A stretch of DNA of 64,000 bases, from NCBI GenBank assembly GCA_011109175.1, contig RDEW01000037.1, forward strand, positions 407,600 through 471,599, given 5' to 3'. Positions 9,564 through 60,026 of the stretch are shown one piece after another (within the stretch, counting starts at the first letter, position 1; every line of letters begins with the position of its first letter). The stretch is from Dicyema japonicum. Lineage: Eukaryota; Animalia; Dicyemida. The notes under the pieces are model-generated. The model was given only the letters and a program-made list of their open reading frames with translations, ran no database searches and was not told the DNA's origin. A program made the position numbers and the translations under genes.

Positions 9564-9944
9564 GACTAGAGTTATCCTTCCATGGCCACTTGTATAACTG
9601 GTGTGTCTTTTTGTCATAGCTGTTGCTTCCAGAATGACATTGTTGATATAGGCAACCCCGCTGTCAATGGAGGTTAAGCTCTCCAACTGAAACCCAGTCA
9701 AACGATTGTCTGTAAGATCTCGTAAGAGAACTGATAGGTCCACCATAGAGTACCTTATTTTCTGGCATGACCCAAGCGAAGGTAAAAATAATTTACATTC
9801 ACTAAAAATAATTTTCCTTTTGTAGGCATTTCCCATTAGTTCATGTCCCCACGTGAAACTCCGCCGTACGTGGAACTCCATCTAATTTTTATGAAATTTT
9901 TCTGACTCTGATATAACTTTCGACTGGTGAACCACACCACATTA

Positions 9945-10870
9945 TACAATAAAAATAACACCAGAGACCACGGTTACACAAACTAACTAATCACGTGATC
10001 CCAGCACGCTCTAGCAGGGACCTCATCTTGGCCCAATGATCGTCCCCACACAAGCACGTATCGGTCGAGTGACTGAACCTTCGCAGTCACGACGGCGCGT
10101 TCCGTGGTTCATTCTTATCAAGGTTTCAAAAAGCATTGGTGGCTGGAGTTCTCCAGGAATCAAGCGTTCCGTGATTTTGGAGGCTCTTCTCCGGCTAGCC
10201 TCGATCTTCAAGACATTAGTCCAAAGATAAGTGGACCCCATATACCACATGCATAAGAGATGCGTAGTTTATATATATTGCTCAAAACAGAATGCTTTCC
10301 GATTTTCCATAAGCCTGTGAGGCATTTCAGAACATTAGTTTTCTTTTCGCATTTCGTAATTACGTTTTCAACATGGGGAGAGAGTGACATATGCATGTCA
10401 AAAGTCACCCAAAGGATCCTTTGGGATTTTCTGAAAGGAATAGCTTCATTGTTTGCCTTCAGTTCGACCGTCCGTCTTCCCAGTCTCTTGTCTGAAGTAA
10501 ATAGGGTTGTGACGGACTATTCACTGCTAGTAGTTAGGCGATTCTTTGATAGTTATGCCAGTCCAGATTTTCTTGCAATTTCGAAGTGGCAATCTGGATG
10601 TCCTGATCGCGTAGGCAATGACGATGTCATAGGCATAAGTTAGAATAATATCATTTTCGGAGTCTGGAGTGGGGAAGTCCGCCATGAATAAGTTGAATAA
10701 AACTGAAGACAAAGGGGATTTTTGCGGAACCCCATTAGGGAGAAGCCGTGAAATAGACCTTGACTGGCCAATGGAGACGCGTCCCCTCCGACCACTAAGG
10801 AAGTTAGCTAGCCAGAGTTTGAGCTGGAAAAACTTCCATAAGGCTGGAATACAATTTTTGTGTATAAGCC
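9945..10870 (-). mobile_element. 5'-truncated Ingi/Vingi-like LINE
   Basis: RT 'GVPQK...LFNLFMADFPT..ILTYAYD', thumb 'MTFDMHMSLSPHVENVI' and the family C-terminus 'RPIRACVGT...AGIT*' followed by a short 3' UTR and an AT-rich tail. Confidence 0.8.
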
Positions 10871-24620: not shown

Positions 24621-25690
24621 GAGAAGGAACGAGCACAATAGCATATGTGGATGACGTGGACTTTATTTCGAATAACAAAGAACAGTTAATTGCACTTTCG
24701 GATAAAATGGTTGATTGGTCATTAAAAGTAAACACAACAAAAGGATTAATTATTTTAACAAGCCGCGTGGCGCCATGTGGTGCTTCGTGGCTAATTGGTT
24801 GAAGTTTCTGTTTTGTTTGTCTGTTCCTCCTCTCTCTTATTAGATCCACTTGTCTAGGTGGCGCCCAGTGCCAGGCCGGCACGAAAAAGGATCATTTGCT
24901 CTCTCCCACTCCACTGGAGGAACTTCCACAACTGCAAGTATGGACGTCTTACCCTTTATGTTGATTCGAATGGACTCTGATTCTGTAAAAGTGGAAACTG
25001 AATGCACTTAATTAGTTGTTTACTTTAACTTCTTTCTCGGTGTATCCGGGGTTAATAAATAATAGTAAAATACAAACAAAACCGAAATCATGGGGCTAAA
25101 TAGAAGTGAGGAAAGGACCGAGGAGCACTGACACAGATCTCGGTGACACCAAAGATATAACACGAAGGATGACAGTAACTAATGTCGCTTTCAACAAAAT
25201 GAAGAAGACTTGACTTCTAAAAAAAAGGCTTGACCCTTAAACTCGAATGAGAGTATACAATGCCCTAGTGAGGCCAATCCTATTATATAATGCCGGTACA
25301 TGGGCATGTACAGGACAGGAACTCGAAAAGTTGAATTCTTTTACAGAAATCATCTCCGAGCGTTTCTTCCCGAAGCTTTTTCAAAATGCCGTCCGAAATC
25401 TTATACAAGAGAACAGGAACTGAGCAATATCATGTGATATTACTGATTCAAGATGGAAGCTATTTGGACACATACTCCACCACGATTTGGGGACTCTTGC
25501 CAACATAGCAATGGAGGAGTACTTTGTCTTTGAGGCTTCGCGTTTCCGAGGACAACATTGCCGGTACTCCTAGATGAAGATCTCAGGAGGATTGGAAAGT
25601 GCCTTAAAGATGGGGATGATCTTGATATGCTACGGAACATGGCAACGGATAGAAAAAGATAAGCGATGTTAATTAGATTGTTACCTTTTC
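24621..25690 (+). mobile_element. RTE-like LINE RT/3' fragment with a nested Vingi-like 3' end (~24770-25070)
   Basis: 'IAYVDDVDF', 'RVYNALVRPILLYNAGTW', 'RWKLFGHIL'; the inserted segment ends 'GGGGTTAATAAATAAT'. Confidence 0.7.
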
Positions 25691-33217: not shown

Positions 33218-33450
33218 TATAGTTGCAAAAATTAGGACAAGTAAAGAAATTTGATGTCTCAAACATACCACCAGCATACAAATGGAAGTTAAGCACAATA
33301 TAGGATTACTGGATTTGAACGAAAGAATACCTGATGAATTATGGAATGATATGCAGTTGGTTATCAGGAACGGTGCAATTATTATTATTATTTAAGCCAA
33401 AGAAACACCGTCTTAACCAATAATTAATATTCAGGTGATCCCGGCATCTC

Positions 33451-36237
33451 TCAATAATCGGGCCATTTTTTCTCGATGCTCCGACCGTGATCCCACGCAT
33501 TTTCTATACGGACGGGGTCTTTTTCCTTTTCTCTTCTGAAATTGCCTCCAGTTGCCTCTATGATAGACTCGAGTGCTCTGGGGGCAATTTCTTTATCTGT
33601 ATATTTTTCTAGTAACTTTTTTGCTCTTGACTGGATATCTTTAATTTTTGTTAGGTTCGTTGCCGACAGGTTAGATCCCCATGCAGCACATGCATAGCCT
33701 ATTGTTGGCTCGACATACTGCTTGTAGAGGGTCCCGATACCTGGCGGATAAATTCCTCCACAGTTCCAAAGGAAGGCCTTTACAAAATTGATCTTCTTTG
33801 CACAGGTTGATATGATAGATTCCACATGGGCTGAGAAGCAGAGGAAAGTATCAAAAGTTACTCCCAGTATCTTCTGCGTTTTCTTTTGTGGTATAGGTAC
33901 TCCATTTAACGTGACATCAATTGTTTGCGTTCCCATCTTTCTATTCTTAGTAAATAGAGTGACTGCTGACTTTTCGGAACATGCATTTAATCGATTCTCG
34001 CACAACCATCCAAATATGTTATTTAGTATTCCTTGTAGTCTTTCCTTAGCATGTTCGACGTTTACGTCTCTAGATGCGACAACTATGTCATCGGCATAGG
34101 AAAGTAGTATGTCATTATTATTCATAGGTACGGGGAGATCACTCAAAAACAAATTAAAAAGGATTGGTGACAGAGGAGATCCTTGGGGTACACCATTGGG
34201 TAATAATCCCGATCTGGAACTCTTGTTTCCGACGGATACTTTCCCTCGGCGTCCACTTACGAAATTTGCTAACCATAACTTTAATGGTGCATCAATTTTT
34301 GTCAAAAATATTTTTCGTATGAGGATCTTCCTTGGGACAGAGTCGAAAGCTTTTTGAATATCGATCGTACATATGACCGATTTTTCCTGTTTTGGCTTGT
34401 TCTTGTGTCCTTCAGTTATGAACTTCATTAATGTTGTTAGGAAGGAGGTTGTTGATAATCCTTCCTTGAAGCCATGTTGGAATGTAGGTTGTGGGAGAAA
34501 AGGGCGAATAACTTTTAGGACCAGTTTCTCCAGGATCCTCGACAAAACACATATAAGGGAAACTGGTCTGTAAGAGCCGGGATCGTTCTTCGGTCTTCCC
34601 GGCTTCAATATTGGTCGAATTTTTGATAGTTTCCACAAAGTCGGTATGGTATTTCTGTTCAGCGATGTGTTGTAGATGTTTGTTAATGCATTTATTGATG
34701 CTGGGCCCAAGTGTTTCAGCAGAATAAGAGGAATTCCGTCTGGGCCACATGAGTTTGTTTTTTTCTGATTTGATATTGCTTTGGATACATCTTTAGGGAG
34801 AAAATAAATCAGCGGGGCAAATTTGGATGGCTTTCTCTTTATTTTCGTTTGTGTGTTAATCTTTTTATAAGGAATGTGACTGATTCGAATACAATGTTTC
34901 ATATATTTATTCAGATTGAGCTGGCATTGTTCTTTGTTATCTTCGTATTCTGGGTTCTTCAGACGCCTCAACATCTTCCACATGTTGGAAATTGAGGTCT
35001 GGTTATTCATGGCAGCAGAGATTCGCATGAGTTTCTTCCTTTGGGTGTTGTTTGTGCTTTTCGTGATAAGAATGTTTAGTGACCTGATTCGATTAATAAC
35101 CTCTCGTGAACGATGTATCATTTTCTTAAGGTTGTTTCTTTCCATAATTATTTTCCTTGTTTTTGAGTCGTATTTCAATTTTTCGTTTTTTATATATGCT
35201 TTTCTGATAAAAATATTTCTTCCGTCAATGATTATTTTGTTGAAATAGTATATAGCTTTGTCTATGGAGGAGAAATTTTCAGATTGGAAATGTTGCAGTT
35301 TTGAATCAACGAAATTTGTAAAGCCAGTCCAATTTGCATTTTTGTAATCATAGAAATGAATAGGCTTCGGTACAAAGCGTGGCTCGCAGTTCAGCTTCAT
35401 TAACATTGAATGGTGGTCGCTCCGGAGGTCATAACGGACCGTCCAATTAATGATCGTGGAAAGACGAGGTGAGCAGACGGATAAGTCCGGAGATGTCACC
35501 ATGTCCTTCGTGTTGTATGGTGTCCTAGTGTTCTTTATCGGGTTGTTGATGATTATTAAGTTTTGCATTTGGGATAATAGCAGGTTTCCTCTGTTATCAG
35601 CGGATTGGTAGCGGAACCAAGAAGGGTGCTTCGCATTAAGGTCTCCACATAAAAGCAAGTTCTCCAGTTTGTCCAAGGTAGATAGGTCAAAGGAGAAATT
35701 TTTCTTGCAGGAGCCAGGAGGAGGAACATAAACATTCGCAATTTCAATTTTTCCAATGGAAGTTATAACAGAGATTCCAATTATCTCCGTGTTCGAGTCT
35801 TCCATTAAGCTCTTGTAAAGAGAAGGGTTCTCGAGGTATTTTATTCCTTTTCTCACAAGAGTCAGTAGACCCCCTCCTTGACCAGATGGGCGGTCGGATC
35901 TTACTGTGTTGTATCCGTTAAAGAGAGGAGTAGGAATTTTATTTGAAAGTTTCGTTTCCTGGAGAAGGCAGATGTCCACTCTGTTCCTCTCCAAGAATAA
36001 GGAAAGTTCGGCAATTTTTCCTCTGATCCCGTTTATGTTTAAGCTTTGGATTGTTAACTTCTTTGGGCCTGGGTTTTGTTCCACGTCTCCTGAGGTCAAC
36101 ATTCTCAATCGATAGAATGTTCCAACAGTGAGAGAATGCCGTCCAGTGGGAAGTCCTCTGGTTGGTAGAGAGCAAATGGTTCTTTTTAGATATAGTTTAG
36201 GACTATATCCGACGCCACCAGAAACGGTGAACCACAT
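33451..36237 (-). CDS. 2A-APE endonuclease-reverse transcriptase polyprotein (928 aa); no RNase H, no C-terminal zinc finger
   Basis: 'SGDVEQNPGP' (36064-36087). EN: 'SLNINGI..LQETK..VRSDR..GGGL..NVYVPP..GDLNAKH..SPDLS..SDH'. RT: 'SCGPDGIP..SYRPVSL..QHGFK..IDIQKAFDSVP..GVPQGSPLSP..SYADD..KILGVTFD'. Confidence 0.95.
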   Translation of the reverse strand: MWFTVSGGVGYSPKLYLKRTICSLPTRGLPTGRHSLTVGTFYRLRMLTSGDVEQNPGPKKLTIQSLNINGIRGKIAELSLFLERNRVDICLLQETKLSNKIPTPLFNGYNTVRSDRPSGQGGGLLTLVRKGIKYLENPSLYKSLMEDSNTEIIGISVITSIGKIEIANVYVPPPGSCKKNFSFDLSTLDKLENLLLCGDLNAKHPSWFRYQSADNRGNLLLSQMQNLIIINNPIKNTRTPYNTKDMVTSPDLSVCSPRLSTIINWTVRYDLRSDHHSMLMKLNCEPRFVPKPIHFYDYKNANWTGFTNFVDSKLQHFQSENFSSIDKAIYYFNKIIIDGRNIFIRKAYIKNEKLKYDSKTRKIIMERNNLKKMIHRSREVINRIRSLNILITKSTNNTQRKKLMRISAAMNNQTSISNMWKMLRRLKNPEYEDNKEQCQLNLNKYMKHCIRISHIPYKKINTQTKIKRKPSKFAPLIYFLPKDVSKAISNQKKTNSCGPDGIPLILLKHLGPASINALTNIYNTSLNRNTIPTLWKLSKIRPILKPGRPKNDPGSYRPVSLICVLSRILEKLVLKVIRPFLPQPTFQHGFKEGLSTTSFLTTLMKFITEGHKNKPKQEKSVICTIDIQKAFDSVPRKILIRKIFLTKIDAPLKLWLANFVSGRRGKVSVGNKSSRSGLLPNGVPQGSPLSPILFNLFLSDLPVPMNNNDILLSYADDIVVASRDVNVEHAKERLQGILNNIFGWLCENRLNACSEKSAVTLFTKNRKMGTQTIDVTLNGVPIPQKKTQKILGVTFDTFLCFSAHVESIISTCAKKINFVKAFLWNCGGIYPPGIGTLYKQYVEPTIGYACAAWGSNLSATNLTKIKDIQSRAKKLLEKYTDKEIAPRALESIIEATGGNFRREKEKDPVRIENAWDHGRSIEKKWPDY

Positions 36238-36247
36238 GACGCACGCC
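36176..36247 (-). ncRNA. Candidate HDV-like self-cleaving ribozyme (double pseudoknot) at the LINE 5' end, overlapping the ATG
   Basis: P1 GCGTC/GGCGT, P2 GTGGTTC/GAACCAT, P3 ACC/GGT, P4 (GG)ATATAG/CTATAT(CT), J4/2 CTAAAAA. The pairings covary with the copy at 57225-57290. L3 (GTTTCT) is non-canonical. Confidence 0.5.
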
Positions 36248-38449
36248 TAAATTTCAGGAACGGTGCAATAAAACATATCAAATGCAAAACGCCTGCCAAG
36301 TGCTCTGAGTAGCTCTCTGTTAACATCTGTTAACAAGCTCGAAAGCTGCTAAAGTCTCTGAATATAGACGAGACAAGAAAACTTAACTCTGAATTCAAAA
36401 AGGCAGCCAGGAAGGATAAAGAAGACTACTGGAGGTTACATTGCAAAAAATGAAAGATGATTATAAGAGAGGTCACACTAGGAATGTGTATTTACAACTA
36501 AAAAGATTACGAGCCCCCTTTACGAAAATGATGGGCAAAATCAAGGACAAGGATGGTGTTGAATTGCTAGGCCAACAGAACATCCGAAATCCTTGGAGAG
36601 AATATACGGAATGACTATATTCAGAAACTGTGTGCCTACCCATATATGTTGATGAAACAACGTTGGGTGAGGGGCATAAAATTTTTGAGGAGGAATGCGT
36701 GTGGGCTACACGGCAATTAACAGGAACAAGGCACCGGGGATTGACAACATCTCAAGCGAATTGTTGAAGGCTATACCGGTGACAGCTATCACCAGTCTAT
36801 GTCAAAAAATTTGGGAAACTGGTATTTGGCCACGTGAGTGGAAAAGATCTATATTTATTTTAATACCGAAAAAAGGAGATAGCAAGGACTGTTCAAACTA
36901 TCGTACAATAGCCTTAATTCCCCACGTCAGCAAATTACTTCTAAAAATAATACAACATCGTCTAATGCCAAATGCCGAAATTATTCTACCGGATGTCCAA
37001 GCAGGATTCAGGAAGGGACGAGGCACTATGGAAAAAGCCCATGAATCCCAAAAGAATGTATACATGTGCTTTATTGACTATCGAATGTGCTTTATTGACT
37101 ATCGAAAAGCTTTTGATTCCGTTATACATGACAAGATGTGGTCTGCTTTAAAAGAATTTGGATTCGATGGCCATCTGATATTGCTCATCAAATCTCTTTA
37201 TAAGAATCAAGAAGCTATTGTTAGAACAGTGTATGGAGTTACCGATTGGTTCAAATTGGTAAAGGAGTAAGACAAGGATGCTTATTATCTCCCATCATAT
37301 TCAATAATTATGCCGAAATGATCATGACTAAATTGGATATTGTATCTAATAACAGGATTAAAATTGGAGGCAGGAATATCAATAATTCAGAGAAGAGAGC
37401 GCCGTCTTTGGTTTATTGCTATATGTCAAAAAGACCAAAATTATGACGACTGCTAATAATGGAACTAAAAATTTGGAATAAAAAAATAGAGAGTTGCGAT
37501 GATGTTGTCTTTCTGGGATGTCTAATTAATCGGAATGGTGACGGAGGCTTGGAAATCAAGAGTCGAATTGCCATGGGACGCCTTCCAGTGAATGAATAGA
37601 ATTTGGAAAAACAAAGATATTTGCTTAAGGAACAAATGCAGACTGGTTAATGCAATCGTGTTCTCGGTTTTTCTATACGGCGCAGAATCATGGATACTGA
37701 AAAAGGCGGATAGACGAAAAATTGATGCTTTTGAACTTTGGTGATGAAGGAGGTTACTAAGAATCCCTTGGACCTCCAAAGTAACAACCATCAATGTACT
37801 CAAACGGGTAGAGACTGACATTTCGTTAGAGGGAAGAATCGTAAAACACAGATTGGCGTTCTTTGGGCATGTTGTCCGCTCTGATTCCCTGGAAAGAACC
37901 ATTATGCTGAGCAATATTCTGGGAAGAGAAGACCTGGCCGACCAAGGACTCGGTGGCTATCCACGGTGGAAGACGTCACGGAAATGCCTATATCAAGGCT
38001 ACTCCAAATTGCGACGGATCTGGGAGAGTGAAGAAATTGGCTCATGAGATCTCCAAGGGTCGGACACGACATAATTTGGGTAACATAGACGTTAGTGTGG
38101 AAGTGGAATCGATCGTATTGAGCTGTTGCATTTTCAGCTAACAATAGTAGTTTAATTTTTGAGTTGACAAGACGCTTTTCAGCAAGAAAAGGAAAGTATA
38201 TTCATTCAGCATCTTGGTTTTCCAGCTTTCAATAATGGCTCGATAAGTGAGTGGCGTATTATCAAAAAATGTTCAATTCTATTCATATCTATTTTCCAAG
38301 TGTAGCTGTTTTCCTAAACAAGTAAAACTCAGGGAATCCGGATATTTAAAATGGATTCTTTTAATCATTAATTTGTTTGATATTTCCTTTTATTGTTTCA
38401 TTTTCTCTTGATTAGAATAATTTCTTTATATTTTTTTATACATCGCTGT

Positions 38450-39440: not shown

Positions 39441-40857
39441 TTGACGATCTATTTATTGCTTTCCAGAATTGACGTAATGAACTTTTCCTGTTGAGGGGAT
39501 TAACCAGGTTTCGACATCTCTAATCTTGGTGTTGTCTTTGATGTTTTCATTAAGTTGTCTGATGATTTTCAAAGAAGTCAATCGGATGGCATTGTTTCAT
39601 CAGGTTTCTTGGTTTTATGTTTTTAAGTGTGCGAGAATTGAGAATATAAAATTCTTATATGATGAGAGAGGAATACATGGTCACCTTTTGAATGACCGAT
39701 TTTGGCGGCCTCATCTATCGAATGTATTGTTATGAGAGACCTCTGGCCAATTCTCTGTCAACAAAATTACTGTAGAACAATCAACCTTATAGTTATTGAT
39801 CTTTGTGGTGGAATGTAAAAATTGATCAAAGTAATCCAAAAGAATGGGGAACAGCTGGAGTTTGATTGTAATCTACTCCATAGTATTGTCAAAGAGTAAA
39901 AGCTCTGCGGTTCGTGGACTTTTGTCCATAAAGGATATGTCGTTCTTCACAATAGTGAGTGGCCTTTTTGAAGATCCTTACGAACCCGGGGAAGGAAGGT
40001 GTTGACGTTGAGGGTGAGAGTGAGGTCGACTCGATTTTAGGAAAGGATTGCCCGAAGTTCGATAATCTTGCTTCTAAATCAATTTGTATGTAGATATGAT
40101 ATTATTAAGTCTCCACGTGGGCCAGGGTTTGTCGCCACATACGAGAATAAAGAACAATGATGAGGCGGAATCGGAGGCACATAGGTTAAAGAAACCACCA
40201 CATGGTGGAAGATGTAATCATAGGTAATGAATTGACTTTTTTATTAAAAATAATTTTATAGAATAAAGAGAACTTTATTTAATTATAAATTAATTATTTG
40301 ATTCATATTTGTTTAGAATTTGAAGTATTTGGTGGATATTTTCATTACTATCCTCAATCAGTCCTACTACCAAAGTCTAATAAATTAAAAGTACAGAGTT
40401 TATATCCTCAGATATTCTCTTCATACATATTTCATATTCAGAAATCAAGTTTGATAAATATTGATATCGGATTTTCTTACGATTTCTACATTCCCCAGCT
40501 TTTCCAGGCATCATTATTGTTATCAGTGTAGTTTTCTTATTAAATAAGTAATATGCGCGCTTATAAAATCAATATTTTTGAAGGTTAAGTATATTACATA
40601 TATTCTTTTTCGAACTTGACAATAGGCTTAACAGAACAAAACAGAAAACCCAAATTTGAAGCAATATGCTTATGGACCGGTTCACTTTCCGTTAGATTGT
40701 TATCGAGACAATTGGAAGTACCAAGTCTTTTCACAAAAGATCGGAATTTTTGGTTTTAGAAGTGACCATAAATGTAGTGCTTCCTCCAGTTGATCTTTGT
40801 TACTATTATGTTGACAAGGATAAATTGACGTTTTTATTCATCTTCTAATCATATCAA

Positions 40858-41270
40858 CCTGTGCAAAGAAGATCAATTTCGTCAAAGCCTTCCTTTGGAA
40901 CTGTGGAGGAATTTATCCGCCAGGTATCGGGACCCTCTACAAGCAGTATGTCGAGCCAACAATAGGCTATGCATGTGCTGCATGGGGATCTAACCTGTCG
41001 GCAACGAACCTAATAAAAATTCAAGAGATCCAGTCAAGAGCAATAAAATTACTGGAAAAATATACAGATAAAGAAATTGCCCCCAGAGCACTAGAGTCAA
41101 TCATAGAGGCAACTGGAGGAAATTTCATAAGAGGAGGGGAAAAAGACCTCCGTCCGTATAGAAAATGTGTGGGGTCGCGATCGGATCCCGATTATTGAAA
41201 GATTCCAGAATCACCTGAATATTAGTTATTGGTTAAGACGGCGTTTCATGGGCTTAAATAATAATAATAC
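40858..41270 (+). mobile_element. 5'-truncated copy of the 33380-36253 family
   Basis: Near-identical nucleotide match to 33380-33800 (reverse strand), with the same 3' UTR and (AAT)n tail. Confidence 0.9.
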
Positions 41271-57221: not shown

Positions 57222-60026
57222 TAACGTCATGTGGTTCGCCGTTTCTGGTGACGAAAACTGTGGAATATACTTCACAGACAAAAGAACCATCCTCTACGTC
57301 CAATCCAAAAGGAATGTCCTTCTTGGACGATCTCTCCACTGGCCTCTCTCTCCTGCCTTGATGGAAGCCCACCTAATGCTTTCCTGCGATGTAAACGCCA
57401 ATCCTGGACCTCGAAAACCCATTATTTTGATTCAACTAAACATAATGGAGTGAAGGGAAGATCCTCGAACTCAAAACCTCTTAAAAGGTATAATACTGAC
57501 ATTTACCTACTCCAAGAAACAAGACTGACTCCGTCTTCTTCCACTCCCGTCTTCCCAAACTATCACGTCATCAGGCGCGACCGACTGCTTACCCTTATCA
57601 AAAATGAAATTCCGTACGCAAACTAAACTTTTGTCAACCTCAAGTCTCCCGTCAAATATATTAGTATTTAGTAATACAAGATATTCGAGTTCATCGGAAA
57701 CATAAACATATTGAATGTGTATGTGCCACCGCCCAACTCATGTCCCAAGGAATTCAGGTTTTCCCTGTCAGACATCGACAAATCAAAAAATATGTTACTT
57801 TGTGGAAACCTAAATGCAAAGCATCCGACATGGTTCAAGAACCTAACATGCGATGTCAGAGGAAACCAATTGTTATCGAATCTGGATGACCTGATAATAT
57901 TAAACAACCCTACATTCAATACAAGGACTCCCTACGAGCGAATGACATGACATCGTCCCCCGATCTCACTCTTGCCTCAACAAACATCGCAACATTAACA
58001 AAATGGACAGTGCTATACGATACCAGCAGTGACCAATCCCGTTATGATTACGTTTGAAGGAAGTGTCAATTGCAAAAAACCTGTTTTATTTACCGACTAC
58101 AAAAATGTCGACTGGAAAAAGTTCTCAAATTTTGTCGACTATTATCTACTTGACTTTCATTTATCCAATTTCAACTCCATCGATAAAGCACTATTTTAAT
58201 AGAGTGGTACGCGAGGGAATAAAAATTTGTATTAAAAGAAGGCCACTGACCTCAAGAGAAAATTCTTCCCCAGAGCCGATCCACTCATAAAAAAATAAAT
58301 TACCTAAAAAGCCTCCAAAAACAATCCTGGGAAACAAGATTGAAAATTCGTACATTAGAAAGAGAGATCAGGAACAATGCAAAGAAGAAACAAGAGAAAG
58401 TTTGGAAAAACCTCATGTCCAATCTAAACAAGCAGAACTCCTATACAAAAATGTGGAAAACACTTAGAAGCGTAATTAACGCTGACAACCCGGCCGCACG
58501 TGATGAAATGGAAAACAAGATCTTCTTAAACAAACTTCTGAAGTACTACTCCTCCACGAGTTTCATCCCATATAAGAAATTCGAAGGTCCATCCATCCTA
58601 GCCCTCAATCCTAAAAGAGTCACCTCCCGATTGTCCTCTCTGTGGAGAACGTATAGAATATGGTCAAGGGTCAAAAACCGATTTATTCCTGTGGTCCGGA
58701 CGGAATTCCTGCAATAGTTCTGAAAAACATAGGCCCCTATGCTATCATGGCCCTCACAAAAATTTTCAACTTTTCAATCAACGAAAATTGTATTCCTTCT
58801 ATATGGAAGCTATCAAACATACGACCAATTCTGAAACCCGGGCGACCAAAGGGATCACCAGCCTCATACAGACCAATATCTCTCCTATGTGTTACATCAA
58901 AACTTTTGGAAAAGCTGATTCTTGAACTAATCAAACCATACTTTCCTGATGCACCTTTTCAACACGGATTCAGAAAAGGACACTCCACAGAAACGCATCT
59001 TACATGCCTTACAAATTTCATCAAGGATGGACTAAAGCGCAAACCTCATCAGAAGTCTTTGTTATGCTCCATCGATATAGAAAAGGCTTTTAATACTGTC
59101 CCAAGAAAGCTTTTGACAAGGAAGATCTTTACGTCAAAAATTCCAAACAACCTGAAAATCTGGATCGCAAATTTCCTAAATGGAAGAAGAGGAAGAGTAA
59201 CTGCTGGAAAAACTAGATCAGTGACCAAGTTCCTTCCAAATGGAGTCCCTCAAGGATCTCCACTTTCACCACACCTATTCAACCTATTCTTGAATAATAT
59301 GCCCTCCCATACCAGTGACGATACTCTGGTTCTGCCATATGCAGATGATATAATCGTCGCACTCAAAGACCAGTGCGTTTACAATACTGTTTACCGGATA
59401 CAAGCTTCATTGGACGATCTGAACTGTTGGCTCGTTAAGAACATTTTACATACAACTCCCAAAAAATCTTATACAACAATTTTCAGAACAAACATAAGAT
59501 TGACAAACTCCGCTCAATGTTTAACCGTAAATGGAATCTCAATCCCCACGACCAACTGGGTCAAGATACTGGGCGTAACTTACGACCCACTCTTGACCTT
59601 CAGCAAACACATCGACAACGTTATCTCTCGGCACAACAACAGCTAAATTTTGTTAAAACACTTCTTGGACAATATAATGGGTGTTTCAACTCAAATTTGG
59701 ACTCCCTCTACGTGCAGTATATTTAACCGTCTCTAACTTACGGGTGTGCTGCATGGGGAACCAACCTATCAAACAGGAATATAGAAAAAATCAATACCTT
59801 CCAAAAACTAAGGTTTGCAAAGGTTTTCTTAAACACCTCTAAACCCTACACCTTTTGAAGAATTAGTGAAGAAAACCGGAGCCTTACTACCCTCCAAAAA
59901 AGTTAGAAACCTTTGGAACCCGGGAAGAACACCGAGCAAGAATGAGATGGCTACTCGAGGCAGCCGGAATCACCTGACGGCTATGTAGTTAATTAATTTG
60001 TCATTTTTGGTTTTTAATAATAATAA
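57222..60026 (+). mobile_element. Full-length but frameshifted Ingi/Vingi-like LINE (second subfamily) with the 5' pseudoknot and a 2A variant
   Basis: 'MWFAVSG..LSCDVNANPGP' (57388-57411), EN remnants, a 328-aa RT ORF (58660-59646), the end 'EEHRARMRWLLEAAGIT*' and a (TAA)n tail. No TSD found. Confidence 0.9.
57225..57290 (+). ncRNA. Second copy of the candidate HDV-like pseudoknot
   Basis: P1 CGTC/GACG, P2 GTGGTTC/GAACCAT, P3 GCC/GGT, P4 CTGTGGA/TTCACAG, J4/2 ACAAAA. Confidence 0.4.

What the first reader, a model, noticed from the sequence alone, without database searches (positions are those of the whole stretch)
36176..36247. Covarying HDV-like double pseudoknot at the LINE 5' end that contains the start codon
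Seen: two LINEs that are otherwise very divergent (36253- and 57225+) share CGTCATGTGGTTC[A/G]CCGTTTCTGGTG[G/A]CG and a downstream AAAAGAACCAT. These segments pair in HDV order (P1-P2-P3-P3'-P1'-P4-J4/2-P2'). P1 changes T.G to T-A and P3 changes A-T to G.T between the copies. P4 has a completely different sequence but is a 7-8 bp stem in both, followed by C(T/A)AA. In the intact copy P1 starts with a G.U pair, as in HDV. The ATG lies at the J1/2-P2 junction, so the RNA structure is also coding sequence. Known: HDV-like ribozymes process the 5' ends of R2, RTE and trypanosome L1Tc/ingi elements. Inference: this is a compact, possibly new variant. Its L3 (GUUUCU) lacks the canonical U.G reverse wobble, so cleavage is not guaranteed.
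Basis: partly seen in the sequence, partly recalled or inferred. Interest (0 to 1): 0.82.

Follow-up and report, generated by a model that had tools for sequence, protein, structure and literature searches.

The report
HDV-shaped RNA knot heading octopus LINEs
The first ~70 bases of an abundant octopus jumping gene (a LINE with a 2A leader) fold into the same interlocked knot as hepatitis-delta-type self-cutting RNAs and contain the start codon, but the catalytic loop is atypical and four bases upstream of the expected cut are inherited, so self-cutting is unproven.

Summary
Copy A (minus strand, 36246-36176, intact 928-aa endonuclease-RT ORF with a 2A leader) and decayed copy B (57225-57290) share the 29-nt block and AAAAGAACCAT at the same offset. 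A third, non-coding copy G lies at 24765-24893, and I fetched four Octopus sinensis copies. All fold in HDV order (P1-P2-P3-L3-P3'-P1'-P4-J4/2-P2').

P4 is a hairpin of unrelated sequence in A, B and G. P2 has two double compensatory changes in G. Every P1 and P3 substitution keeps pairing. Two distant 2A-LINE relatives carry textbook HDV-like folds in their leaders, so this module probably descends from true HDV-like ribozymes.

Three things argue against a standard ribozyme. L3 (GUUUCU, UUUUCU, UGUCUA) lacks the canonical U...G. No P1.1 pairing is conserved. Contigs from public runs and the O. sinensis copies put the A-family 5' end at G36246, four bases (GCGY) upstream of the P1 base.

Verdict: a real HDV-derived double pseudoknot and a new variant of a known kind. 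Self-cleavage is uncertain; it may act mainly as a structured translation start or 5' handle. The scan had already flagged similar folds elsewhere in this genome.

The parts
36254..36269 (-). 5' target-site duplication of copy A (ATTGCACCGTTCCTGA)
   Evidence: An exact 16-nt repeat is found again at 33364-33379, right after the (TAA)n tail.
36247..36253 (-). Seven extra, non-family bases (AATTTAG) between the TSD and the constant 5' end
   Evidence: They lie inside the TSDs, but contigs of other family copies diverge here (loose ends at 36246). The O. sinensis copies have different AT-rich bases at this place.
36243..36246 (-). Conserved 4-nt leader GCGT (GCGC in O. sinensis), a tandem copy of the first four P1 bases; constant 5' end of the A family
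   Evidence: The same GCGT precedes P1 in copy G.
36237..36242 (-). P1 5' strand (G0 C1 G2 T3 C4 A5); the start codon begins at A5 (36237)
36229..36235 (-). P2 5' strand (GTGGTTC); T6 (36236) is J1/2, and the ATG is 36237-36235
   Evidence: MFE forms P2. One search shows compensatory changes in copy G.
36217..36228 (-). P3 (ACC/GGT) enclosing L3 GTTTCT (36225-36220)
36212..36217 (-). P1 3' strand (T25 G26 G27 C28 G29 T30); T25 is shared with P3
   Evidence: One subfamily has C28>T, which keeps a G.U pair (place 36214).
36189..36211 (-). J1/4 (C31 G32) and the P4 hairpin (G33-T40 with A46-C53, loop CCTAA)
   Evidence: 9-bp stem reached by 9 of 5000 shuffles. T37-A49 becomes C-G in O. sinensis.
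36183..36189 (-). J4/2: C53 TAAAAA (candidate catalytic C followed by an A run)
   Evidence: Equivalent stretches: ACAAAA in B, (C)GAAAAA in G, CAAAT in L001, CCAAGA in L002.
36176..36182 (-). P2 3' strand (GAACCAT)
33451..36237 (-). Intact 928-aa ORF: leader peptide, 2A (DVEQNPGP, 36087-36064), AP-endonuclease, reverse transcriptase
33364..33394 (-). (TAA)n 3' tail and 3' TSD of copy A
57225..57290 (+). Copy B of the module (decayed LINE): P1 C1-A5 with T25-G29, P4 CTGTGGA/TTCACAG, J4/2 ACAAAA
   Evidence: A candidate 9-nt TSD, TTTATTTAA, ends just before C1 and recurs 2856 nt downstream.
24765..24893 (+). Copy G (non-coding, SINE-like or decayed). Leader GCGT 24765-24768. P1 GGCGCCA 24769-24775 with TGGCGCC 24859-24865. 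67-nt J1/2. P2 GATCC 24843-24847 with GGATC 24889-24893. P3 ACT/GGT. L3 TGTCTA. P4 GTGCC/GGCAC.
   Evidence: Covariance-model hit at E 0.024, sequence, fold.

Best explanation
This is a roughly 70-nt RNA module at the 5' end of an octopus 2A-LINE lineage. It folds into the nested double pseudoknot of the hepatitis-delta ribozyme family, and it most likely descends from the ordinary HDV-like ribozymes that head related 2A LINEs.

Shown here:
- The module is constrained at the nucleotide level, not the protein level.
- P2, P3 and P4 form, and P1 can form, in every copy.
- The AUG that opens the leader-2A-EN-RT frame sits at the J1/2-P2 junction.

Inferred:
- The knot acts in cis on the LINE transcript.
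- In the ancestral or B-type state it may cut read-through transcripts just 5' of C1.
- In the very abundant A family the active-site loop is non-canonical, and the RNA that is reverse-transcribed keeps four bases upstream of the P1 base. Cutting there must therefore be weak, conditional or lost.
- The retained job is most likely structural: presenting the AUG for cap-independent or short-leader translation, and/or serving as a 5' handle for the element's protein. An internal promoter may coexist with it, as in L1Tc Pr77.
For: - Conserved block and equal spacing in otherwise divergent elements.
- All eight codon third positions in the 29-nt block (G7 to C28) are identical between A and B, while the substitutions are non-synonymous.
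- P4 is a hairpin of unrelated sequence in A, B and G. Shuffles reached the observed stem in 9/5000, 15/5000 and 90/5000 cases. O. sinensis adds a double change, T37-A49 to C-G.
- P2 in copy G has two double compensatory pairs, U12-A61 to C-G and G10-C63 to A-U.
- P1 pair 3-27 is U.G, U-A or C-G in different copies. Pair 0-30 is G.U or G-C. G has a perfect 7-bp P1.
- 93.8% of cells pair, against 35-56% when partners are slid.
- Related 2A LINEs carry canonical HDV-like folds with U...G loops and C-A-A junctions. Shuffles gave such a hit in 4/400 (L002) and 3/400 (L001) cases.
- C-N-A-A is present in J4/2 of every copy.
- Variable extra bases sit at the 5' junction, as described for ribozyme-processed R2 (PMC3774820).
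- HDV-like ribozymes are reported to promote translation initiation and protein binding in LINEs (PMC6765202).
Against: - The shuffle controls on alignable columns are not significant (63/500 and 56/500). Effectively only 3-4 independent sequences are available.
- L3 lacks the U...G and C residues seen in L001, L002 and HDV. No L3 to J1/4 pairing is shared by A, B and G.
- P1 is only 4-6 bp in A and B.
- The leader GCGY is inherited in A and G.
- No RNA data were available, so neither 5' ends nor translation were observed.
- Rfam gives no hit. It also misses the canonical-looking L002 fold, so this says little either way.
Confidence: 0.5

Rival explanations
1. It is a fully active HDV-like self-cleaving ribozyme, a compact core variant. 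It cuts the co-transcript at the base of P1 and so defines the LINE's 5' end.
For: - HDV topology with a C-N-A-A J4/2 in all copies, and a G.U first pair in A.
- Canonical ribozyme-like folds in related 2A LINEs.
- Copy B appears to start exactly at C1.
- Variable non-templated bases at the junction, as in R2 lineages that cut at the element end (PMC3774820).
- L1TcRz also starts with C1 and has a 1-bp P1.1 (PMC4035085, PMC3185411).
Against: - In the A family, contigs end at 36246 in 24, 26, 8 and 5 cases across four runs. No cluster of three or more contigs at 36241-36243 appears in the truncated list. Four of four O. sinensis copies begin GCGCG. The template RNA therefore keeps four bases upstream of the predicted cut.
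- The same leader is conserved in copy G.
- L3 lacks the conserved U...G and C residues, and P1.1 is not conserved.
- P1 is 4-6 bp, against the usual 6-7 (PMC4908430).
Confidence: 0.28
2. It is a simple three-way-junction RNA (P2 closing the P3 and P4 hairpins) with no functional P1 pseudoknot, for example a translation or packaging signal. The HDV likeness would then be coincidental or vestigial.
For: - Minimum-free-energy folds recover P2, P3 and P4 without any pseudoknot.
- The strongest covariation is in P2 and P4.
- P1 shows only one-sided changes in the alignable columns.
Against: - P1 complementarity is kept in all seven copies, with three pair types at position 3-27, and lengthens to a perfect 7 bp in G.
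- P1' directly abuts P3', as in HDV.
- Relatives have full HDV folds.
Confidence: 0.1
3. The conserved block is only a DNA-level internal promoter or initiator of the LINE, and the pairings are incidental.
For: - The block sits at the extreme 5' end.
- The A family has a precise constant start at G36246.
- LINE internal promoters are known, and L1Tc's first 77 nt are both a promoter and a ribozyme (PMC3383444).
Against: - A promoter does not explain three unrelated P4 hairpins at the same place, the double compensatory P2 changes in G, or the kept 30-nt spacing.
- A promoter role could coexist with the RNA fold.
Confidence: 0.07

Closest known systems
L1TcRz / Pr77 of the trypanosomatid L1Tc/ingi LINEs (PMC3185411, PMC3383444, PMC4035085)
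   Same: A ~77-nt module at the very 5' end of an AP-endonuclease LINE. It has the HDV-like fold, C as its first nucleotide, a 3-bp P3 and a weak 1-2 bp P1.1. Upstream bases that extend P1 modulate cutting. Dual promoter and RNA roles have been proposed. From my own knowledge, L1Tc also has an N-terminal 2A.
   Different: L1TcRz is experimentally active and cuts at the element's +1. Here the A family keeps a 4-nt leader upstream of P1, L3 is different, and the AUG lies inside the fold. There is no sequence similarity. Clade membership (Ingi/Vingi) was not tested.
HDV-like ribozymes of R2, RTE, Baggins and other LINEs (Ruminski et al. 2011, cited via PMC6765202; PMC3774820)
   Same: The position at the LINE 5' end, the nested double pseudoknot, variable non-templated bases at 5' junctions, and the proposed roles in processing, translation initiation and protein binding.
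   Different: Those ribozymes keep highly conserved P1.1, P3 and L3 nucleotides and a ~7-bp P1. The octopus module has GUUUCU-type L3, no conserved P1.1 and a P1 of 4-7 bp.
HDV and CPEB3 ribozymes and large-J1/2 Agam-type drz ribozymes (PMC4908430)
   Same: The helix order, the 3-bp P3, the ~7-bp P2, the C-N-A-A junction and a G.U at the P1 base in copy A. Copy G has a long J1/2 insert like the Agam-2 ribozymes.
   Different: No match to any Rfam HDV-like model. G's J1/2 is not predicted to be structured. The core loop is non-canonical.
Canonical HDV-like folds in related 2A LINEs fetched here (L002:51-115, L001:~309-385)
   Same: The same element type (2A leader, then endonuclease and RT), the same position upstream of 2A, the same helix order and similar size. 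L001 even shares P3 GCC/GGT with copy B.
   Different: Their L3 loops (UCUGCGU, UACACGA) keep U at position 1 and G at position 6, which the octopus copies do not. In L001 the fold lies in the 5' UTR, not over the AUG.

Membership tests
HDV-like self-cleaving ribozymes | Nested double pseudoknot in the order P1-P2-P3-L3-P3'-P1'-(J1/4)-P4-J4/2-P2' (PMC4908430) | tested here: met
   It can be drawn in A, B, G and four O. sinensis copies. 93.8% of cells pair, against 35-56% when partners are slid.
HDV-like self-cleaving ribozymes | P1 of 6-7 bp whose 3' strand directly follows P3' (PMC4908430, PMC3774820) | tested here: inconclusive
   The adjacency is met. With or without the T25 shared with P3, P1 is 6 or 5 bp in A, 5 or 4 bp in B, and 7 or 6 bp in G.
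HDV-like self-cleaving ribozymes | Conserved L3 / active-site loop (U...G reverse wobble and C residues; the P1.1, P3 and L3 nucleotides are highly conserved in R2, PMC3774820; the U.G detail is from my own knowledge) | tested here: not met
   L3 is GUUUCU, UUUUCU or UGUCUA. No G lies near the 3' end of the loop. L001 and L002 do have it.
HDV-like self-cleaving ribozymes | P1.1: 1-2 bp between L3 and J1/4 (PMC4908430, PMC3185411) | tested here: inconclusive
   J1/4 is CG(G) in A, AAAA in B and CA in G. Each can make some pair with L3, but no common register exists. An alternative P3 register gives two C-G pairs in A only and breaks a pair in G (reasoned).
HDV-like self-cleaving ribozymes | Catalytic C at the start of J4/2, followed by A-rich bases | tested here: met
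   CUAA in A, CAAA in B, CGAA in G, CAAA in L001 and CCAA in L002. The distance of the C from P4 and P2' differs between A and B.
HDV-like self-cleaving ribozymes | The cleavage site (first nucleotide of P1) coincides with the 5' end of the processed or copied RNA | tested here: not met
   The A-family copies start at G36246, four bases upstream of the P1 base. G has the same leader. Copy B alone fits, on a candidate TSD.
HDV-like self-cleaving ribozymes | Mg2+-dependent self-scission giving 5'-OH and 2',3'-cyclic phosphate ends | not testable with these tools
   No assay is available. No RNA run was identified, and the runs laid were contigs of unknown or DNA kind.
Rfam HDV-like families (HDV_ribozyme, CPEB3, drz-*) | A score against the curated covariance models | tested here: not met
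   No hit at the gathering score or at E<=10 for A, B or G. The canonical-looking folds in L001 and L002 are also missed, so the test has little power.
2A-bearing APE-type non-LTR retrotransposon | A single ORF with an N-terminal 2A (D[V/I]ExNPGP), AP-endonuclease and RT, plus a TSD and a simple-repeat tail | tested here: met
   Pfam Exo_endo_phos and RVT_1, DVEQNPGP at aa 51-58, a 16-bp TSD and a (TAA)n tail. The clade (Vingi, Ingi, CR1-like) was not tested.

The most novel reading that the evidence does not exclude
The knot is a ribozyme-derived element that no longer needs to cut, or that cuts with a different active-site solution lacking the L3 G.U metal site. On this reading it has been exapted as a 5'-terminal device that holds the AUG in J1/2-P2 and recruits ribosomes and/or the LINE protein, in a family with thousands of copies. 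The inherited GCGY leader, a tandem copy of the first four P1 bases, would act as an alternative-P1 switch that decides between cut and uncut (copyable) RNA.
Probability: 0.3. Interest if true: 0.75.

Novelty: new variant of a known kind. Interest (0 to 1): 0.5.

Why it matters
HDV-like ribozymes are known to process and help translate some LINEs, but mostly in arthropod R2/RTE and trypanosome L1Tc elements. Here a highly successful cephalopod LINE family keeps the delta fold while changing its most conserved loop. It places its start codon inside the fold and inherits bases upstream of the expected cut.

If the RNA still cuts, it widens the known sequence space of the delta active site. If it does not, it is a natural example of a ribozyme fold retained for translation or RNP assembly. 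It also gives a handle on how octopus LINEs, which are abundant and reportedly active in neural tissue, make and translate their RNA. The three natural variants in one window (A, B, G) form a ready-made mutational series for assays.

Tried and rejected
- Rfam at the gathering score and at E<=10 on A, B, G, L001 and L002: nothing relevant.
- Pattern scans of metagenome, viral and prokaryote-genome collections: nothing, or one chance hit in an Acidobacteria MAG.
- Protein searches found close relatives only in O. sinensis, for the A type. There were no B-type relatives.
- L008, a 44%-identical O. sinensis LINE, and L009-L011 gave no convincing 5' fold.
- The alternative P1 register (leader GCGY with G27-Y30) is only 4 bp. 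It matches the family 5' end but is too short for a delta P1. I kept it as a possible competitor.
- An extended P1 with a bulged Y-1 (C-3-G32, G-2-C31) works in A but not in G, and it is broken by the common G32>A subfamily variant.
- An alternative P3 register (U12 C13 A14 with U22 G23 G24) gives A an HDV-like CC/GG P1.1, but it breaks a pair in G and would strip G's P2. I rejected it as the main fold.
- TSDs for the O. sinensis copies were not found.
It gave only contigs of unknown or DNA kind, so there is no information on RNA 5' ends or direction.
- The promoter-only and protein-coding explanations were rejected as sole causes, because of the P4 and P2 covariation and the conserved third positions with non-synonymous changes.
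Full report
**What is there**

On the minus strand the window holds an intact LINE. Its ORF runs 36237..33451 and encodes 928 aa with AP-endonuclease and RT domains. The N-terminal leader ends in a 2A motif, DVEQNPGP. The insertion is bounded by an exact 16-bp target-site duplication at 36269-36254 and 33379-33364, and it ends in a (TAA)n tail. A second, decayed element starts at 57225 on the plus strand and is 41-44% identical at protein level.

The two copies share CGTCATGTGGTTC[A/G]CCGTTTCTGGTG[G/A]CG and AAAAGAACCAT, with GAACCAT at the same offset. They share nothing upstream.

**More copies**

A covariance model of the nested part (P2, P3, P4) was run over the window without filters. It found a third copy, G, at 24765-24893 with E 0.024. 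G has these features:
- the leader GCGT;
- a perfect 7-bp P1 (GGCGCCA/TGGCGCC);
- the same CATGTGG, followed by a 67-nt pyrimidine-rich J1/2;
- P2 GATCC/GGATC, P3 ACT/GGT and L3 TGTCTA;
- a GC-rich P4 (GTGCC/GGCAC) and J4/2 (C)GAAAAA.

It then continues with the same ATTTGCTCTCT as copy A. Its reading frame stops after 22 codons, so it is non-coding.

An exhaustive protein search found an Octopus sinensis protein that is 72% identical from residue 1 (P0046). From it and its cluster members I fetched four genomic copies, L004-L007, from GCA_006345805.1.

**Evidence for the fold**

- P4. A, B and G have unrelated sequences there, yet each forms a hairpin. Shuffles reached the observed stem in 9/5000, 15/5000 and 90/5000 cases. 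O. sinensis changes T37-A49 to C-G and adds one mismatch. Contigs in the laid runs reveal a further subfamily that keeps the outer P4 pairs around a different interior (loose ends at 36206).
- P2. G differs from A and B by two double compensatory pairs, U12-A61 to C-G and G10-C63 to A-U. L005 has C13-G60 changed to U.G.
- P1. Pair 3-27 is U.G (A), U-A (B) or C-G (G). Pair 0-30 is G.U (A), G-C (O. sinensis, G) or unpaired (B). One subfamily has G2-C28 changed to G.U.
- P3. The only changes are A-U to G.U in B and C-G to U.G in G.
- Pair counts. On the alignable columns, 93.8% of cells pair, against 35-56% when partners are slid. With five sequences the shuffle controls are not significant, at 63/500 and 56/500.
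- Type of constraint. The constraint is on nucleotides. Codon third positions in the block are invariant between A and B, while the observed changes alter amino acids (T/A, V/F, G/D, V/A).
- Chance. A loose HDV descriptor is common in this AT-rich DNA, at 434 loci per 128 kb. At copy-B stringency it finds only 12 loci, two of them these copies.

**Family context**

The two nearest non-octopus relatives, at about 30% identity, both have 2A leaders and both carry delta-type folds upstream of 2A.
- L002:51-115 has a 7-bp P1, a 7-bp P2, P3 GGT/ACC, L3 UCUGCGU and J4/2 CCAAGA.
- L001:~309-385 has a 5-bp P1, P2 GATCCA/TGGATC, P3 GCC/GGT, L3 UACACGA, a 7-bp P4 and J4/2 CAAAU.

Shuffles of those leaders gave such a hit in 4/400 and 3/400 cases. 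Their loops keep U at position 1 and G at position 6. The octopus loops do not. The octopus module therefore looks like a diverged descendant of ordinary HDV-like ribozymes. Rfam recognises none of these folds.

**Where the copied RNA starts**

Contigs from four public runs of the same organism were laid at >=80% identity over 34900-36700, and thousands matched.
- Depth drops about 6-fold at the bin that starts at 36242.
- Loose ends pile up at 36246 (24, 26, 8 and 5 contigs), with a few at 36245 and 36244.
- The flanks beyond are unrelated and AT-rich.
- No cluster appears at 36241-36243 in the listed rows, though the list is truncated.

All four O. sinensis copies read ...TTTA|GCGCGCGTCATG. 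In copy A, seven extra bases (AATTTAG) lie between the TSD and G36246. Variable added bases of this kind are what R2 shows when its template RNA has a fixed, processed 5' end (PMC3774820).

The fixed end here, however, is four bases (GCGY) upstream of the base of the stable P1. The same GCGT precedes the perfect P1 of copy G. The leader is a tandem copy of the first four P1 bases, so it can form a 4-bp alternative P1 whose base is exactly the family terminus. Four base pairs is far below the 6-7 bp usual for delta ribozymes (PMC4908430). Copy B has no leader: a candidate 9-nt TSD ends right before C1 and recurs 2856 nt downstream, compared with 2862 nt in A.

**Reading**

The fold is real and HDV-derived (about 0.8). 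Whether it still cuts is open.
- For cutting: the topology, C-N-A-A in J4/2 of every copy, G.U at the P1 base in A, B starting at C1, and the ribozyme-bearing relatives.
- Against cutting: the non-canonical L3, the lack of a shared P1.1, the short P1 in A and B, and above all the inherited leader in a family with thousands of copies.

I therefore favour a module whose main retained role is structural. It would present the embedded AUG for translation of a very short-leader or uncapped RNA, and/or bind the element's protein. Both roles are documented or proposed for LINE HDV-like ribozymes (PMC6765202). Cleavage would be weak, conditional or lost in the A family, and a promoter role may coexist as in L1Tc Pr77 (PMC3383444). 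A fully active compact ribozyme remains a serious rival, at about 0.28.

**Comparison and novelty**

The closest known systems are L1TcRz/Pr77 and the R2, RTE and Baggins ribozymes. This module passes the topology, P3 and J4/2 tests. It fails the L3 test and the test that the cut site equals the 5' end. It is inconclusive for P1 length and P1.1, so I do not file it as a proven member. I found no paper in the held library that links HDV-like ribozymes to octopus LINEs.

Earlier notes of this scan had already flagged HDV-topology LINE heads elsewhere in the same genome. They reached similar cautions: a degenerate core and conserved bases upstream of the cut. My tests were made independently on this window.

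**Limits**

- No RNA data were available.
- Only 3-4 effectively independent sequences were available.
- The B type is known from a single decayed copy.
- The LINE clade was not determined.

Noticed in passing
window 24765-24935 (+): A third, non-coding copy of the 5' module (copy G). It has a 67-nt pyrimidine-rich insert in J1/2 and about 45 nt of homology to copy A downstream of the fold. No LINE ORF follows, so it may be a SINE-like passenger of the LINE head.
   Followed up: partly
L002:51-115 and L001:~309-385: Textbook-looking HDV-like folds upstream of the 2A motif, in two unidentified metagenome and ENA contigs that encode the nearest non-octopus relatives of this LINE. Rfam recognises neither.
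   Followed up: partly
window 36342-36700: Another very high-copy repeat lies directly upstream of copy A. Contigs of other copies continue past 36342 with a consistent sequence (agreement 0.98), so the repeat is interrupted or diverged here. 36247-36341 has about 6-fold lower depth.
   Followed up: no
window 36206 (minus-strand position 36 of the module): Ten and five contigs in two runs share the first ~40 nt of the module. They then carry a different P4 interior (...GGATA CAAGTCAAAAGTG TATCC AAAAA), which again forms a hairpin. This is a separate subfamily.
   Followed up: partly
window 36203, 36210, 36214: One subfamily, dominant in run X5, has G39>A, G32>A and C28>T on the minus strand. 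C28>T keeps a G.U pair in P1. G32>A would break the extended-P1 idea and lengthen P4.
   Followed up: partly
L004:1983-1991 and L007:1483-1491: Two O. sinensis copies share nine identical bases (ATGTTTTTA) just upstream of GCGCG, although their farther flanks are unrelated. All six copies have TTTA within 1-2 nt of the constant start. This could be a target preference or patterned added bases.
   Followed up: no
window ~9930-9965 (-): ATGTGGTGTGGTTCACCAG resembles the ATGTGGTTCACC core of the module, but the covariance model did not pick it up. It is probably chance.
   Followed up: no
window 40848-41147 (+): A 3' fragment, 93% identical at protein level to copy A (aa 808-907). This is a young 5'-truncated copy of the same family.
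   Followed up: no
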